A DNA stretch of 64,000 nucleotides, taken from contig OZ320316.1 of assembly GCA_976226885.1 (NCBI GenBank), forward strand, positions 92,504,001 to 92,568,000, read 5' to 3'. The position numbers and the translations under genes are program-made. Positions 578 to 6,500 of this stretch are shown here, in pieces. The stretch's first letter is position 1. Each line of letters opens with the position of its first letter. The stretch comes from Iphione sp. A-MEVVRFRX5 (taxonomy: Eukaryota). The notes under the pieces are model-generated. The model did not search any database. It saw only the letters and a list, made by a program, of their open reading frames with translations, and had not been told where the DNA came from.

Positions 578-3500
578 CTGGAGGATAATACAATAGGAGG
601 ATGGGGATGAACTTCCCAGGGCCTACGATGGCTAACACGAGTTGGAAATGGTACGTAGGTTCACGCCGAGGTTACATGCTCTTGCATGGTCGCAAAACAC
701 GAACGGTTAACCTGTATTACAATAATGAATGGACCATGGGAAATACGCGATGAGGCATTATAATCAAGAGATCGACAAGATTAGGGAAGGCATTTATATA
801 TCGCTTCGACGTTGAGGTAAGGTGTCTGTTACAGCTACTGTTACTTCTACCAGGATAATAAACTCGTTAAATCCTAGCCAAGCTAGGCCATTTCAAGCTC
901 GGACGTTTTGAGGTGACATCACGAGCAAGGTATTTAGGAGCCAGTAACTCGCTGTATTTTGTGAATAGAATGACGGGTGGACAGATTCAATGTGGGAATG
1001 CCGTACCTTGGGTCGTTGGGCATGTGCTCAGCCAAGTTGGTAAGCAGTACTGCCACGTTGAAACCGATGTCCTTGGCTGGGTTGTGGAAGCGGTCCGTGA
1101 ATTCATTGAAGTCAACCCGTCCGTCTTGGTTGGCGTCCACACACATCATAATGTACTCAATCTCCTCGCTAATGGAGAAGAGAGGTTAAAGATTATCACT
1201 TTTGCTGCAGGATATTGACGTGGGCTATATATGTATATTAAATGATATGTTTCTGATGTCTAAACATTTTACAAAAAACATAGTTATTATTATATTAATC
1301 TCATATTATCTCTTGAGTAATTTTTTTGAGAGGGCCCAATATTCAAGCATTAAACGAAGGGCAAATATTATCTGCCTCAATATATGCAAAACAACTAATA
1401 TCGTGTAATATATGAGCACATTGTCTCCACTATACTGTAACAATAGAAGGAAACTGCGATGTAAACACTGTATTTGAAGTGTATATGTATGCAAACATAT
1501 AATGTGCCATGGAAATGTCCGTCCCTCTCTCATCGACTATGACTTGTATGTATGAAGCGTGGCACTGGTGTGCACAATCTCAAGGATCACTTTGTACTAA
1601 AAAGTGACATTTTAGTGTAATATGTGAGACTGGGCCATTTCAATAGGATGTATACAATGGACATGCTATGAAGAAAAACAGATTAAAGATCTAAATGTAC
1701 ATCTATAATAATTAAGATTAGTAGGCGTCATTCCCTTGTGTTTATCCACTTATGTGCTACCCTAATGAACACAAATAATATCTTCGTGTTGCAACAAGGA
1801 AATTCCGAGTGGAAAGACAGAGAACATACTGGCTGATCTGCATGCAAAATAGAATGGCTTCCTTTTGATTATGACATGGTTTTCCTGAAAACATTCGTTC
1901 AATTGTCCATGTTGCTGCATGACATAATGGGCCACATTTAACCACTCAGTATGAGCTGATTTAAGAATGAAAATATGTAATAGTCCTACTTGCAAATACC
2001 ACAGATAAGCATGCCTGAGCTGAATCAACCTTAATAGCTATTTATGAGGAAGTTTACAAACGATTTATTAAAGGATCAAATTTGTCATGTTAAATCTGGC
2101 CATATGATGCAGCATACTCAGTATGTCCTGTTTGTCATCATTTCAAACATACTATCAGTTAGTACAAAAAGAAATGGTCCTTTGTCAACATCGTTGATGA
2201 AACAAGGAAGAACAGAGTCGTGATAGAGGAGAGTTTAGTGTGTAGGTGATTATGTATGTTATTGTAACTAGCTCAAATCTGATAGAACTGTACAGATCTT
2301 GGACGGAGGGCACCACCCACAGGCAGTTCCCCTTTGGAGTGGTCGGTTGGCACACCATGCTAGCTGACTTACTCAGTGTAAACCTTCTGATTCTCCATGG
2401 CCCGCCTGAACTCTTTGTGTGAGATAATACCATCTTGGTTGGTATCAAACTCCTGTGTGTTGTGGGAAGATATAAAGACAGACGGATGCTAGAGCGAACC
2501 GTACAAGTTGAGCGAGCAGACAGAGTGCACTGACAAGTCACAGGTGTAGTAGGCATGGGTGTGTACAGAGCACAGTTGAGGAAAGAGATGTAACAAGAGA
2601 CAAGCAAAACTGTGGCAAGAAGCTAGATGAGACAATGTGTATCTAACATGAACAGTACGAGGGGGATGAGGAAGTTTCAGATGTAGTTCCAAACAGGAAA
2701 CCACACAAGCTTGGGTAAAAGATTCAAACTGCTGAGACAGAGACGGAGAGAGCTAGCGTAAAACAGACAAATAGAGAGCGACTTTAAAAGTCGACAAAAT
2801 CAAGATGGTATAAACTATTAAATGGGCAAAAGCTACGTCATAGATATAGACAATGCAATGTTGATGAGGGGATATATTAAATCTTCTGGAAGGAAGGGGC
2901 AAATAATGCAAATGTGTAAGAAAAGAGAAAAAGTTGAAAGACTGAATGAAAGTTGGTGAAAAGAACAAGGAAAATGTATCAAAGGTCAGTAATTTGAAAA
3001 TATTTGAAGAAATATATCACTGTAAACTAAGAGTGAGTTTCTGGTTAGAGCCCTAGGTGTAAGAAACAGGCAAGAATCAAGCGGTCAAAACAACTAGACA
3101 GACAACATAGGTAGCGCCACCACCGCAATTAACATATGCGTACCTATACCTTGAGCTGAGATAAGGCTTAGTTTATCGAAACTGTCATGTATATACTTTA
3201 TTTATTGCCAATTGTTTGTTACAATAAATGAAATCTGTGAGGGTACAGTGGCATACCTCTTTCTTAAGGATGGGGTTTAGGGTAGAGCACCGCTCAAACA
3301 GTGTCCCAGAGAAATTTTGACTAGCGCTGAGATGAAAAATACTTGAGAAAAGTGGTGCTAACGATTCACAGCCCTATCTCAACTACTAGAGAGCTGAAAC
3401 AGAAGCGGCGACATCACCATTGCCAAGAGTGCACAGTGTGTAAAGTGAGACAAAAACGACGAAGACATAATGGTCACAGCTAGCAAAAGCCTCCGCTGGG

Positions 3501-6500
3501 AGAGTGTGCGTTGCTAGGGATACACACCGCGTGTACGTCTTTTGCGTCTCCATCGCTCGACGGAACTCTTTGTAAGAGATCACGCCGTCCTTATTAATGT
3601 CAAACTCCTGGAAGAAGGTAACCAACAGAGCTGACACAAACATGACACCCTTGTGGCTGAGGCAAAATTGAAAATACTTGTAAGTGGGCCTCCCCATCTT
3701 AAAAGCTACTACAGGTAGGCCTATATCATGGCACATTAAAAATACTCCAAAGGCACATTGATGAACTTCAAACAAAATGAAAACACTCCATCTATATGGA
3801 CTCATGCATAAATAATACTTGAAGAAATAAAGTTCTGACCATAAGTATATAATTTGATATTATAGCCTATGTATAGAAACGTTTTGTTTAAAGAGGTAAT
3901 ATATATATAGAAACAAAACACAAAACAGTCCCCCTTTGACCACAAGATTAACCATCTCCCCGCTATGCAAACAAAATAGAAATCCATTTAGTGTAATCGT
4001 AGGGGGCACACTGGTATCCTCCTATGTCATCCTCAATCATTAGGTAGTATCTTCCATCAGAGGTCTTGTGAAATACAGTAGAAATGCCTCTGGCTTGCAT
4101 ACCTACTTATTCTATAGAACATTACAATAATAGATTTTATGTCGTTATGTCCTGTGAATAATGTACAGTTAGTGAATGTGTATAGGGGCGAGGGGCAGCC
4201 TGCAATTGATCTAATACATGTTAATAAATTTATAAATATATATCATGGTTATTTTAACATGAACATGAAAAAAATGTTCTTTTAATGGTCACATATAAAC
4301 GGCAATTCTTAACACAAGGTTTATTACAGGTACATATAAATGGACATAAATAGACAGGGGCATCGAGAAAGGAAAAAGAGGGACTTTACATTTATACACG
4401 CGATGTACGGATAGAGACGAAGTTTCAACATCAATTACACCAAGGAATTACAGTTATCTTTCAGTGATTTCATTTTTTCCCGTGGAAAATCACAGTCCAT
4501 TACCTGGGCTATCAATAAATCTATTCAGCAACGATTTTATATACATGTATGACGATGGTGCCTTTAATATATAGTGCAGATGAGTAATTCTAATCCAGTT
4601 GCTTTTGACGGATAGACACTCCAAGTGAAGTTATACGTATATGTGATAAACTGCCTAATTACTGATTATGACCTATTTCTTTTCCATTATGAATCACCTG
4701 TTGACTACAACCTTCACTAGCAATAGTAAGTCCTATGGCAGCCATGTTTGGCCCTCGGGAGAAATAAACAGCAAATGCATTGATAGAACGTCACTCTGGT
4801 AACAATATAACTAGTAAACCTAGTACAAAAGTTGAGCCGAACATAAAAACTCAGTAAAAGCTGAGTTATTTTCTGCAGCTAAAACTTTGCCAAGTTTATC
4901 GTCGAATGGGAATAAAATAATATTTGGTTTGCCTCGGTGTCACTGACCTTGAATGCTTCAGATCCTGTTAGATCTTTCATCTTCAGGAAGATGTCGAAGA
5001 ACTTCAGGATCATCTGAAAACATCAATAAAACTAACGTTAAAGAGTGCCTAGATAAACTGTTCAGGATGTTCTCATTAAATCGTTTTCAATCAATGTTGA
5101 ATTTTATATATTTGAAAAAAAATCTTTACAGGGAGGTGAGCTGACAACTCAAATGGCCACAAACAAATACATTCTGTCCACAACGTTGAATCCCTGGCAA
5201 CATATATAATACCTACCACCTCAGTATCACCGCAGGCAGTTGCAGTTCACAATGTTATACGGGACGAAGGAACACATATTCAACACATAGGTACTACATC
5301 GTAAAAAATGATGTTTGATTTTCCTTCAGATATACATTGATTATGCCACATTTTATAGGCTGGTCATATAGGTTGAAAAAAGTCACGCAACATTTTATGG
5401 TATAGCTCCTATTTAAAAAGTTTGATTCTTCATTACATTGGCTCAGTGTAATATTACATTAGGTCATAAGAAAACGCCATTAGGCTTGAATATAATATAG
5501 AATAGGTTTTCCTCCCAAGTAACATAATAGGAAATATGTTTAGCTCCTAGTAAAAAAATCAAACCGGAAAGTGCGCAAACGCTGAATGTAGTCCTCTAAA
5601 TACATGTATTCCAACACAGGTCGTGGGCCGCCTTTGAAATGAAAATCTACCCTAAGAGTAGTTTTAACTGTATATTACCTTATAAAAAGGTGCAACAGAT
5701 TGCTGGCTTACTAACCTCAAAGTTGGCGGACGATTCGACTAGGGTGTCCACCATCTGTTTACCAATTGGTCCGTTCATTACGTTGCCTGGCAAGAAAAAA
5801 CAATAATGCTGGCTTGAAGAAATGCCTACTAGAACTTATTTTTGATTTTGAAATAATTAAATGTTCCCCAAAATGTAAAGTCTATGAATTCATTATTTGT
5901 TGAAAGATACCGTATTTTTCAAAACAACAAGGGAAAAAGATGAGTGCTTCTAAAGAATGATAATTACTCGACCCTTAGGCTAAAATAACAGACAAAGCAT
6001 ATCCACTCAGCTACCAATATATTTCCCTTATCCTGATGCAGCCATCATGCTTATACAATATAGAACTGAACATGCTTATTCCGAACCTTCAAGCATGGAG
6101 AGTAACATGATCATCATCTCTTTCTGTAGCTTCATGAACTCTCTCAGCAGATCGAGTTGTTCAGGATCCTGAAATACACATGCTTCGGTCAGTTTCTTTT
6201 AAAATGTACCCCAATTACTGGATTTTCTGTGGTAGTCTCCGTACATTTAGCAAATAATTCTGTTCAAGCTGATTTAACGTTCCCTAACAGATACAATGAA
6301 ATTAATGCTAAATTGAACACAGGAGCGCGAGATAGATTTAGGTATCCTGAATCAAATGTAACACGATGAATGTACACATAATTTTGTAAATGTACATCTA
6401 TATTTATAACTTGTACATATGGGTGCATGAATATGTGTTGATTATTTCAAGGTTGGATCCTTAAATTTTATGCCTAACTGTGTAAAGACACTTTTGAAAC

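What the first reader, a model, noticed from the sequence alone, without database searches (positions are those of the whole stretch)
2373..3607. Mutually exclusive duplicated exons switch EF-hand 1 of the ryanodine receptor
Seen in sequence: two paralogous exons (3528-3607 and 2373-2452) of identical length (80 nt) and phase (0-2), both with intact AG/GT sites and no stops. They encode [27 protein letters not shown] and [27 protein letters not shown]. Including both, or neither, shifts the frame, so exactly one must be used. The nucleotide sequences are well diverged at synonymous positions while the 12-residue loop ligands (D1,N3,D5,G6,I8,S9,E12) are kept in both, which points to an old duplication under purifying selection. 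Established: the RyR EF-hand pair sits in the central domain near the S2-S3 loop and is implicated in Ca2+-dependent regulation. Insect RyR mutually exclusive exons that I know of are in other regions (e.g. SPRY2). Inference: tissue- or stage-specific isoforms with different Ca2+/Mg2+ sensing or inter-subunit contacts (loop positions 2,4,7,10: I/T, K/Q, V/I, Y/H; R vs D at the junction). I do not know of a described EF-hand exon switch in RyR but cannot search to confirm novelty.
Basis: partly seen in the sequence, partly recalled or inferred. Interest (0 to 1): 0.88.

Follow-up and report, generated by a model that had tools for sequence, protein, structure and literature searches.

The report
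Alternative EF-hand exons in worm RyR
An annelid-like worm's calcium-release channel gene (ryanodine receptor) has two interchangeable copies of the exon for its first calcium-binding loop; the same pair occurs in molluscs, lamp shells and (as isoforms) ribbon worms, so it is an old, probably muscle-regulated isoform switch that no paper I found describes.

Summary
On the minus strand, exons 3607-3528 (A) and 2452-2373 (B) are 80-nt paralogues with intact AG/GT sites. They fit the flanking exons (5013-4948 and 1168-1007) of a ryanodine receptor (RyR) gene. Each encodes a canonical EF-hand loop plus the segment after it, matching rabbit RyR1 4079-4105 (EF1 loop 4081-4092). Using both or neither shifts the frame into early stops.

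Both copies are under strong purifying selection: against a second annelid-like genome, pN is 0.016 and pS 0.6-0.9, while the introns no longer align. The same 80-nt pair, in the same order (first copy ending CG giving Arg, second ending GA giving Asp/Glu), is present in the gastropod Elysia. A pair also occurs in Paralvinella (first copy ends CC, Pro), and Lingula has three copies. RefSeq isoforms of oysters, clams, abalone, snails, octopus and a ribbon worm carry one or the other, as do full-length cephalopod transcripts. A flatworm and a rotifer have one exon.

New here: a conserved element, aGCAUGGUGUGC, lies 13 nt after exon B. It nearly matches the RBFOX + SUP-12/RBM24 site of C. elegans egl-15 and suggests muscle-specific exon choice.

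No RNA data could be obtained for this species. I rate it a new member of a known kind: annotated automatically in relatives, and I found no paper describing it.

The parts
4948..5013 (-). It encodes [22 protein letters not shown], the entering helix of EF-hand 1, and ends in phase 0 with donor gtcagt.
   Evidence: conserved in L001, Paralvinella, Lingula and Elysia
3528..3607 (-). Alternative exon A (first copy, 'R-type'), 80 nt. It encodes [26 protein letters not shown] and ends in CG, giving Arg at the junction. It covers the EF1 Ca2+ loop, the exiting helix and the linker (RyR1 4079-4105).
   Evidence: orthologue in L001 with pN 0.016 and pS 0.61; CG-ending (Arg) first copies in Lingula and Elysia, and a CC-ending (Pro) first copy in Paralvinella
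3521..3527 (-). 5' splice site of exon A, GUGUGUA. It is a GU-rich donor, identical in L001 and Lingula and GUGCGUA in Paralvinella.
   Evidence: its role as a regulator binding site is inference only
2373..2452 (-). Alternative exon B (second copy, 'D/E-type'), 80 nt. It encodes [26 protein letters not shown] and ends in GA, giving Asp at the junction. It resembles the single EF1 exon of outgroups more than exon A does.
   Evidence: orthologue in L001 with pN 0.016 and pS 0.87
2350..2361 (-). Intronic element AGCAUGGUGUGC, starting 13 nt downstream of the exon B donor. It matches 11 of 12 positions of the RBFOX + SUP-12 composite site UGCAUGGUGUGC.
   Evidence: The 10-mer GCATGGTGTG occurs only here in the 64-kb window, against 0.10 expected. 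The same element follows the last alternative exon in L001, Lingula and Elysia, and in a degenerate form in Paralvinella. The exact 12-mer is in L002. The motif's identity is taken from PMC5558909 and PMC2777236.
1662..2014 (-). Three further GCAUG copies in the exon B to EF2-exon intron, with 5' ends at 2014, 1845 and 1666. Together with the one at 2360 this makes 4, against 0.66 expected.
   Evidence: Poisson P about 0.005; the other two introns hold 1 and 0 copies
1007..1168 (-). It starts with 1 nt that completes the junction codon, then encodes [53 protein letters not shown] (EF-hand 2).

Best explanation
This is a genuine, ancient pair of mutually exclusive exons in the RyR gene of an annelid-like animal.

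Shown:
- Either copy supplies the Ca2+-binding loop of EF-hand 1, its exiting helix and the short linker to EF-hand 2.
- The reading frame enforces exclusivity. Using both or neither creates an early stop (probably then removed by nonsense-mediated decay; that step is inferred).
- Both versions keep all canonical Ca2+ ligands.
- They differ in non-ligand loop positions 2, 4, 7 and 10. They also differ in three linker residues around the conserved Lys that corresponds to RyR1 K4101, including a charge reversal at the junction (Arg against Asp/Glu).

Inferred:
- The switch tunes Ca2+/Mg2+ sensing by EF1 and its contact with the acidic S2-S3 loop of the neighbouring subunit. That would tune Ca2+/Mg2+-dependent inactivation. 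It does not turn Ca2+ binding on or off.
- Exon choice is set by an RBFOX-type protein together with a SUP-12/RBM24-type protein. They would bind the conserved GCAUGGUGUG element just after exon B and the GCAUG cluster further downstream.
- This should favour exon B in muscle and possibly neurons, and exon A elsewhere.
- The pair arose by tandem exon duplication near the base of the group containing annelids, molluscs, brachiopods and nemerteans. Exon B looks like the ancestral copy.
For: Anatomy and frame. RyR identity and EF1 mapping. Both exons pass the Pfam EF-hand_1 cut-off.

Selection on both copies:
- Window against L001: exons are 81-88% identical while the introns do not align.
- Exon A has pN 0.016 and pS 0.61. 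Exon B has pN 0.016 and pS 0.87.

Same 80-nt exons in tandem elsewhere:
- L001, Paralvinella, Elysia with the same CG and GA endings, and Lingula with three copies.
- A Plakobranchus gene model reads through the R-type copy and then the E-type copy.

One-at-a-time use in relatives:
- RefSeq isoforms of Magallana, Ostrea, Mercenaria, Ruditapes, Haliotis, Biomphalaria, Pomacea, Octopus and Lineus carry one or the other.
- Isoform pairs differ only in this block plus small indels.
- Nine full-length cephalopod transcript contigs split 7:2 between the two versions.

Outgroups: Macrostomum and Brachionus have a single exon. All seven outgroup sequences tested score closer to the B-type.

Regulatory element: unique in the window, conserved in position across three phyla, and absent from the fetched RyR loci of the two single-exon species. 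GCAUG is enriched only in the intron after exon B. UGCAUGGUGUGC is the ASD-1/SUP-12 site (PMC5558909; PMC2777236).

Structure-function lead: in RyR1, K4101 pairs with D4730 of the S2-S3 loop, and K4101E weakens Ca2+/Mg2+ inhibition (PMC10832476). K4101 corresponds to residue 23 of the exon. The acidic S2-S3 cluster is conserved in lophotrochozoan RyRs.
Against: - There is no RNA evidence from this species. No run was listed, so use of both exons here rests on selection and on relatives.
- Three annelid-like full-length transcripts or models (P0178, P0201, Capitella) show only one version each.
- Peptide-level orthology of first against second copies across species is only moderate: 46 species pairs favour it and 20 do not. 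Paralvinella's first copy ends in CC (Pro), not CG.
- The regulatory reading rests on a sequence match alone. In egl-15 the same element lies upstream of the regulated exon and represses it, so the direction of the effect here is inferred from general positional rules.
- The Paralvinella copy of the element has GCAAUG and the Elysia copy has GGAGUG.
- The functional difference between the isoforms is entirely inferred.
Confidence: 0.8

Rival explanations
1. Only one copy is used in this species. The other is a silent relic of an old duplication that happens to remain open.
For: No transcript data exist for this genome. Several annelid-like transcripts show one version only.
Against: Both copies have intact splice sites and open frames in three annelid genomes whose introns no longer align. 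Both have pN/pS of about 0.02-0.03, as low as in the flanking constitutive exons. Both versions are used in molluscs, a nemertean and cephalopod transcripts.
Confidence: 0.07
2. The pairs in annelids, molluscs, brachiopods and nemerteans arose by independent tandem duplications of the same exon, so this is convergence and not one ancient event.
For: Peptide comparison gives mixed signals: 20 of 66 species pairs favour the crossed assignment. Lingula has three copies and venerid clams show three versions. RyR genes are reported to have gained tandem exon substitutions independently in vertebrates, flies and nematodes (PMC9741552). Decapods alternate the neighbouring exon instead.
Against: The order and the terminal dinucleotides are shared. 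The first copy ends in CG (Arg) in two annelids, Lingula, Elysia and all molluscan isoforms, and the second ends in GA (Asp/Glu). The downstream element follows the last copy in three phyla. Synonymous sites between A and B are saturated.
Confidence: 0.2
3. The conserved GCAUGGUGUG element is not a protein-binding splicing enhancer. Instead it is one arm of an RNA hairpin that pairs with the UACAC at the end of the exon and masks the 5' splice site.
For: Minimum-energy folds of the exon B donor region pair the exon's last codons with GGUGUG in both the window and L001. Exon A's donor GUGUGUA can pair with the UACAC just before it.
Against: The fold energies are no better than those of shuffled sequences (z of 0.04 and -1.79). 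The GCAUG half is not explained by this pairing. GCAUG is repeated three more times downstream, as is typical for RBFOX targets.
Confidence: 0.1
4. The duplicated exon is an assembly artefact, such as a collapsed or expanded haplotype.
For: None found.
Against: The copies are only 69% identical, and similarity ends at the exon borders. The same arrangement is present in four independent assemblies of other species.
Confidence: 0.01

Closest known systems
Insect RyR mutually exclusive exons a/b (ASI), e.g. Bactrocera dorsalis, Cnaphalocrocis, Ostrinia
   Same: Same gene family and same mechanism: tandemly duplicated exons used one at a time, with stage- and tissue-dependent use (PMC3989282; PMC8301844).
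   Different: The position in the protein differs. The insect pair is at residues 1135-1165 in the second SPRY domain, whereas this pair is in EF-hand 1, about 3,000 residues further on. The two are not homologous events.
Alpha-actinin (ACTN1/ACTN4) alternative EF-hand exons (non-muscle versus smooth-muscle)
   Same: Mutually exclusive tandem exons that replace an EF-hand motif (PMC9741552). Fox-1/RBFOX acts on this pair through (U)GCAUG elements (PMC2777236).
   Different: In actinin only one version keeps the Ca2+-binding residues. Here both versions keep every canonical ligand, so the switch is more likely quantitative. The protein is also different.
C. elegans egl-15 (FGFR) exons 5A/5B controlled by ASD-1/FOX-1 plus SUP-12 on UGCAUGGUGUGC
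   Same: A mutually exclusive pair with a juxtaposed UGCAUG + GUGUG element. The window has AGCAUGGUGUGC and L002 has the exact 12-mer (PMC5558909).
   Different: In egl-15 the element lies upstream of exon 5B and represses it in muscle. Here it lies 10-30 nt downstream of the last alternative exon, where such sites usually enhance inclusion. Binding has not been tested here.
Automatically predicted RefSeq RyR isoforms of molluscs and Lineus longissimus
   Same: They contain exactly this alternative block. One example is Magallana gigas X2 against X4, where the isoforms differ only in this 26-residue block and one small indel. Another is Biomphalaria glabrata X2 against X5.
   Different: These are database predictions without description or analysis. 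I found no paper that reports the EF1 switch.
Decapod RyR isoforms (Macrobrachium, Cherax)
   Same: Alternative, homologous versions of part of EF-hand 1 in a single-copy invertebrate RyR.
   Different: The alternative exon is the preceding one, which encodes the entering helix. The loop exon is single in the listed isoforms.

Membership tests
Mutually exclusive exon cluster from tandem exon duplication | Adjacent exons that are homologous to each other | tested here: met
   55/80 nt and 20/26 aa identical, and similarity is confined to the exon
Mutually exclusive exon cluster from tandem exon duplication | Same length and phase, intact splice sites, compatible with both neighbouring exons | tested here: met
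   Both are 80 nt with AG/GT sites and run from phase 0 to phase 2. Both isoforms read through.
Mutually exclusive exon cluster from tandem exon duplication | A mechanism that forbids using both or neither | tested here: met
   A+B gives a stop in the next exon. Skipping both gives a stop after 4 codons.
Mutually exclusive exon cluster from tandem exon duplication | Mature transcripts of this species contain exactly one of the two exons | not testable with these tools
   No sequencing run was listed for this stretch. In relatives the feature is met.
Mutually exclusive exon cluster from tandem exon duplication | Both copies are maintained by selection | tested here: met
   pN is 0.016 for both copies, against pS of 0.61 and 0.87, while the introns do not align. 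The pair is present in Paralvinella, Elysia and Lingula.
Ryanodine receptor, EF-hand 1 of the central-domain EF-hand pair | The gene is a RyR | tested here: met
   The EF2 exon matches RyR1-3 chains at E of about 1e-16. About 2,900 residues of RyR are encoded across the window, 68-69% identical to annelid RyRs.
Ryanodine receptor, EF-hand 1 of the central-domain EF-hand pair | The exon corresponds to the EF1 loop (rabbit RyR1 4081-4092) | tested here: met
   A gapless alignment of the homologous mollusc segment to RyR1 4051-4176 places exon residue 3 at position 4081. The EF1 numbering itself is from my own knowledge.
Ryanodine receptor, EF-hand 1 of the central-domain EF-hand pair | Canonical EF-hand loop (D-x-N-x-D-G-x-I-x-x-x-E) | tested here: met
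   Both versions have it. Pfam EF-hand_1 scores are 30.7 and 27.4 bits against a cut-off of 25.4.
Ryanodine receptor, EF-hand 1 of the central-domain EF-hand pair | Binds Ca2+/Mg2+ and modulates gating | not testable with these tools
   This needs ITC measurements and channel recordings.
RBFOX + SUP-12/RBM24 composite splicing element | Sequence UGCAUG directly followed by GUGUG(C) | tested here: met
   The window has AGCAUGGUGUGC (11 of 12 positions). L001 has UGCAUGGUGUGU, L002 the exact 12-mer and Lingula UGCAUGGUGUAC. Elysia has UGCAUGGAGUGG, and Paralvinella is degenerate.
RBFOX + SUP-12/RBM24 composite splicing element | Conserved position next to a regulated exon | tested here: met
   It starts 10-29 nt downstream of the last alternative exon in five genomes of three phyla, while the rest of the intron does not align. 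It is absent from the fetched RyR loci of the two single-exon species.
RBFOX + SUP-12/RBM24 composite splicing element | Bound by these proteins and needed for tissue-specific exon choice | not testable with these tools
   This needs a minigene, CLIP or knock-down experiment.
Insect RyR ASI a/b exon pair | Located in the SPRY2 region (about residues 1135-1165) | tested here: not met
   This pair maps to RyR1 4079-4105. The insect site is described.
Actinin-type EF-hand switch (Ca2+-sensitive versus Ca2+-insensitive) | One version has lost the Ca2+ ligands | tested here: not met
   Both versions keep D1, N3, D5, G6, I8, S9 and E12 in this window and in L001.

The most novel reading that the evidence does not exclude
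Annelids, molluscs, brachiopods and nemerteans share an EF-hand-1 isoform switch in their single RyR gene that dates to their common ancestor (Cambrian or earlier by my own dating). A conserved RBFOX + RBM24/SUP-12 composite element drives it. The result is muscle and non-muscle channels that differ in Ca2+/Mg2+-dependent inactivation through the contact between EF-hand 1 and the S2-S3 loop. This would be a natural domain-swap experiment on the disputed role of the RyR EF-hands.
Probability: 0.3. Interest if true: 0.65.

Novelty: new member of a known kind. Interest (0 to 1): 0.5.

Why it matters

The role of the RyR EF-hand pair is still debated. According to a review (PMC8301844) it is dispensable for cytosolic Ca2+ activation of RyR2. 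Mutagenesis of RyR1 K4101 implicates it in Ca2+/Mg2+ inhibition through the S2-S3 loop (PMC10832476).

Here, evolution has kept two versions of exactly this element in several phyla. Both have canonical Ca2+ ligands. They differ around the K4101-equivalent residue, and at the junction residue the charge is reversed in most lineages checked.

Expressing the two versions gives a clean, ready-made test of what EF1 does. The conserved GCAUGGUGUG element offers an equally direct test of whether the RBFOX/SUP-12 partnership, defined in C. elegans, also operates in lophotrochozoans.

The mechanism itself (mutually exclusive tandem exons) is well known, and the isoforms already sit unremarked in RefSeq. 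This is therefore an informative new case and not a new principle.

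Tried and rejected
1. RNA evidence in this species. The look-up of sequencing runs listed no run, so read laying could not be used.

2. Competing RNA structures or docking-selector pairing. The window and L001 introns share no k-mers above chance except the GCATGGTGTG element. Hairpins around both donors fold no better than shuffled sequences. This idea is not supported.

3. Steric hindrance and U12/U2 incompatibility were rejected. The A-B intron is 1,075 nt, and all splice sites are ordinary GT-AG.

4. A 'weak donor on A, strong donor on B' argument was dropped. By hand count both donors match 5-6 of 9 consensus positions.

5. Other duplicated exons. A tblastx comparison of the window against itself gave only low-complexity noise, but it also failed to list the A/B pair itself, so it does not exclude further pairs.

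6. Fetching genomic loci with short relatives' fragments. P0002 to P0007 gave contigs too short to be useful or no record at all. Full-length mollusc and nemertean proteins exceed the 5,000-residue limit of the locus tool, and one further look-up found nothing. Gene order in bivalves, cephalopods and Lineus therefore could not be checked.

7. Structure prediction was not run.

8. Literature. Eight searches and several full-text look-ups found no description of an EF-hand exon switch in any RyR. The library does not cover most subscription journals, so absence is not proven.

Full report
**1. The observation**

The gene lies on the minus strand. Exon A (3607-3528) and exon B (2452-2373) are both 80 nt. 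Exon A is preceded by ...cttcttccag and followed by gtgtgta. Exon B is preceded by ...acaacacacag and followed by gtaagtc. Neither contains a stop. They encode [26 protein letters not shown] and [26 protein letters not shown].

Identity is 55/80 nt and 20/26 aa. Codon positions 1, 2 and 3 match at 21, 23 and 11 of 26 sites. A repeat search of the first 6 kb finds this pair as the top family, and the similarity ends at the exon borders.

The upstream exon (5013-4948) ends in phase 0 with ...GSEAFK|gtcagt. The downstream exon (1168-1007) begins with a lone C. The junction codon is therefore CGC (Arg) after exon A and GAC (Asp) after exon B. Both single-exon products read through. A+B runs into a stop inside the next exon, and skipping both gives a stop after four codons.

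**2. What the gene and the exon are**

The downstream exon matches RyR1 4107-4158 and RyR2 4062-4112 of solved structures. Proteins fetched from the databases align to about 2,900 residues encoded across the window. The best matches are two unnamed full-length transcripts and Capitella teleta RyR at 68-69% identity, ahead of molluscs and a brachiopod. Around the EF-hands the figure is about 80% to annelids. Earlier notes of this scan also call this genome an annelid.

The homologous segment of a mollusc RyR aligns without gaps to rabbit RyR1 4051-4176. Exon residues 1-26 then fall on 4079-4104 and the junction codon on 4105. The 12-residue loop falls on 4081-4092, the EF1 loop; that numbering is from my own knowledge. 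Each exon alone exceeds Pfam's EF-hand_1 gathering score. Both keep D1, N3, D5, G6, I8, S9 and E12.

**3. Are both copies functional?**

No RNA run could be listed for this stretch, so I used comparative evidence.

- A single-exon fragment found by the representative search led to a 15-kb genomic contig of a related species, L001. It has the same five exons in the same order, and both alternative exons are 96% identical in protein.
- Between the window and L001 only the exons align. Exon identities are 83% (w52), 88% (A), 85% (B), 81% (w54) and 82% (w55), and the introns are unalignable.
- Nei-Gojobori counts give pN 0.016 and pS 0.61 for exon A, and pN 0.016 and pS 0.87 for exon B. The constitutive EF2 exon gives pN 0.008 and pS 0.96. 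Both copies are therefore under purifying selection as strong as that on constitutive exons.
- Synonymous sites between A and B are saturated (pS 0.93), so there has been no recent duplication or gene conversion.

**4. Distribution**

*Genomic loci*

| Species (locus) | EF1 exon copies | Junction |
|---|---|---|
| Paralvinella palmiformis, annelid (L007) | two 80-nt exons, 26305-26384 and 27115-27194 | ...-P, then ...-E |
| Elysia chlorotica, gastropod (L008) | two 80-nt exons, 9012-9091 and 9626-9705 | CG (Arg), then GA (Glu) |
| Lingula anatina, brachiopod (L006) | three 80-nt exons; the first ends CG\|gtgtgta as in the window | first is Arg |
| Macrostomum lignano, flatworm (L009) | single EF1 exon | - |
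| Brachionus plicatilis, rotifer (L010) | EF1 fused to its neighbours, no duplicate | - |

A Plakobranchus gene model reads through both copies in the order R-type then E-type.

*Isoforms in the protein collection*

- Members of 90% clusters show that RefSeq isoforms carry one version or the other. The species are Magallana gigas, Ostrea edulis, Crassostrea angulata, Mercenaria, Ruditapes, Haliotis rufescens and H. asinina, Biomphalaria glabrata, Pomacea, Octopus bimaculoides and the nemertean Lineus longissimus.
- Isoform pairs are otherwise identical apart from small indels.
- Nine full-length contigs of 16-17 kb from sequencing-run assemblies each encode more than 5,150 residues without interruption, so they must come from mRNA. 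They belong to one cephalopod gene and split 7:2 between the versions. This is direct RNA evidence in a relative.
- Listed isoforms of a hemichordate, echinoderms, a springtail, spiders, schistosomes and bdelloid rotifers show one version only. Decapods alternate the preceding exon instead. At most 15 members per cluster were visible, so absence in those groups is provisional.

**5. One origin or several?**

Shared characters favour one origin. These are the order of the copies, the CG ending (Arg) of the first copy in two annelids, Lingula, Elysia and all molluscan isoforms, the GA ending (Asp/Glu) of the second copy, and the downstream element described in section 6.

The 26-residue peptides alone give only moderate support: 46 species pairs favour first-with-first and 20 favour the crossed assignment. 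All seven outgroup sequences score closer to the second copy, which therefore looks ancestral. I put independent origins at about 0.2.

**6. How exclusivity and choice may work**

Exclusivity at the protein level follows from the reading frame. The intron between A and B is 1,075 nt and all sites are GT-AG, which excludes steric hindrance and spliceosome incompatibility.

I searched for conserved intronic sequence between the window and L001. Nothing rose above chance except one 10-mer, GCATGGTGTG, lying 13 and 29 nt after the exon B donor respectively.

| Genome | Sequence after the last alternative exon | Offset from donor |
|---|---|---|
| window | aGCATGGTGTGC | +13 |
| L001 | TGCATGGTGTGt | +29 |
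| Lingula (after third exon) | TGCATGGTGTAc | +15 |
| Elysia | TGCATGGAGTGG | +14 |
| Paralvinella | GGCAATGGTGTGC | +10 |

The motif does not follow Lingula's middle exon. The 10-mer occurs once in the 64-kb window, against 0.10 expected. It occurs once each in L001 and Elysia, at that place. A further mollusc-like contig, L002, has the exact 12-mer TGCATGGTGTGC in the same intron. The fetched RyR loci of the two single-exon species lack the motif. In the window, the intron after exon B holds four GCATG against 0.66 expected, while the other two introns hold one and none.

[quoted passage not shown] Through it they control the mutually exclusive exons of C. elegans egl-15 (PMC5558909; PMC2777236). 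RBM24 bound at +13 to +29 of an intron promotes U1 recognition of the upstream donor.

I therefore infer that exon B is promoted where both factors are present, above all in muscle. This is a sequence-based inference. The direction of the effect and the tissues remain untested.

An alternative is that GUGUG pairs with the UACAC at the end of each exon. Fold energies give this no support.

**7. What the switch may change**

Both versions keep every canonical ligand side chain, so this is not an on/off switch like the actinin EF-hand exons (PMC9741552).

In this window the differences lie at loop positions 2, 4, 7 and 10 (I/T, K/Q, V/I, Y/H) and at exon residues 21, 24 and 27 (T/N, T/V, R/D). 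Residue 23 is a Lys in both and corresponds to RyR1 K4101.

In RyR1, K4101 bonds with D4730 of the S2-S3 loop. K4101E weakens Ca2+ and Mg2+ inhibition and raises the affinity for activation (PMC10832476). The acidic S2-S3 segment KY[SA]EQY[DE]Y[DE] is conserved in annelid, mollusc, nemertean and brachiopod RyRs.

At the junction residue, four positions after that Lys, the first copy has Arg (Pro in Paralvinella). The second has Asp or Glu in annelids, oysters and gastropods, and an uncharged residue in cephalopods, venerid clams and Lingula's other copies. This makes an effect on the EF-hand to S2-S3 contact, and so on Ca2+/Mg2+-dependent inactivation, the most economical hypothesis. It remains a hypothesis.

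**8. Comparison with what is known**

- Mutually exclusive exons from tandem duplication are a well-known device.
- Insect RyRs have such a pair in SPRY2.
- RyR genes of vertebrates, flies and nematodes are listed among families that gained such events independently.
- C. elegans unc-68 diversifies through DR2 cassettes and alternative first exons.
- None of the papers I could search describes an EF-hand switch in a RyR. The isoforms do exist as unannotated RefSeq predictions.

I therefore class this as a new member of a known kind. It carries two added points of interest: great age with conservation across phyla, and a recognisable composite regulatory element.

**9. Verdict**

| Question | Verdict |
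|---|---|
| Observation | confirmed |
| Real, used, mutually exclusive pair | confidence about 0.8 |
| Regulatory and functional readings | plausible but unproven |
| Interest | 0.5 |

Noticed in passing
proteins P0230-P0247, P0459-P0486 (Macrobrachium rosenbergii, M. nipponense, Cherax quadricarinatus RefSeq isoforms): Decapod RyR isoforms alternate the exon before the EF1 loop. The two versions are SNVELILRYFDMFLKLRDLTSSTTFQ and SNVEMIVRFFNLFLRLKEVTSSASFQ, the entering helix of EF1. The loop exon is single in the listed isoforms. This looks like a second, independent alternative-exon site in the same EF-hand.
   Followed up: partly
proteins P0185, P0410-P0420 (full-length cephalopod transcript contigs): A 37-residue insert (DTLKRIAGG...) near residue 1370 is present in 2 of 2 transcripts with the R-type EF1 exon. 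It is absent from 7 of 7 transcripts with the other exon. This hints at coordinated isoform programmes.
   Followed up: partly
L006:44039-45700 (Lingula anatina): There are three tandem 80-nt EF1 exons instead of two, and only the middle one is in the annotated protein. Venerid clam isoforms also show three versions.
   Followed up: partly
window 3521-3550 and 2350-2395 (minus strand); L001 8265-8310 and 9065-9135: Both alternative exons end in UACAC (Tyr-Thr codons) and are followed by GUGUG. For exon A the GUGUG is at the donor itself, and for exon B it lies within the conserved element. Small hairpins that bury the 5' splice site can therefore be drawn. Predicted energies are no better than those of shuffled sequences.
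   Followed up: yes
protein P0543 (Plakobranchus ocellatus) and P0556 (Paralvinella palmiformis): Two deposited gene models mishandle the cluster. The Plakobranchus model includes both alternative exons joined by an extra residue. The Paralvinella model reads past the first copy's donor, giving ...KMFSPCVSCSGIEEIEY.
   Followed up: yes
window 49431-49591: A run of 161 N lies inside what looks like a RyR coding exon (open frame 49960-49397, minus strand).
   Followed up: no
window 28207-28271, 39040-39112, 44853-44935: Three long dinucleotide microsatellites, (CT)32, (GA)36 and (AG)42, lie in RyR introns.
   Followed up: no
earlier notes on the same genome (other pieces): The scan has flagged many other candidate mutually exclusive exon pairs in this genome, in KCNQ, nicotinic receptor, quaking, PDPR-like and VPS26 genes. 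It would be worth asking whether the GCAUGGUGUG element recurs next to those pairs.
   Followed up: no
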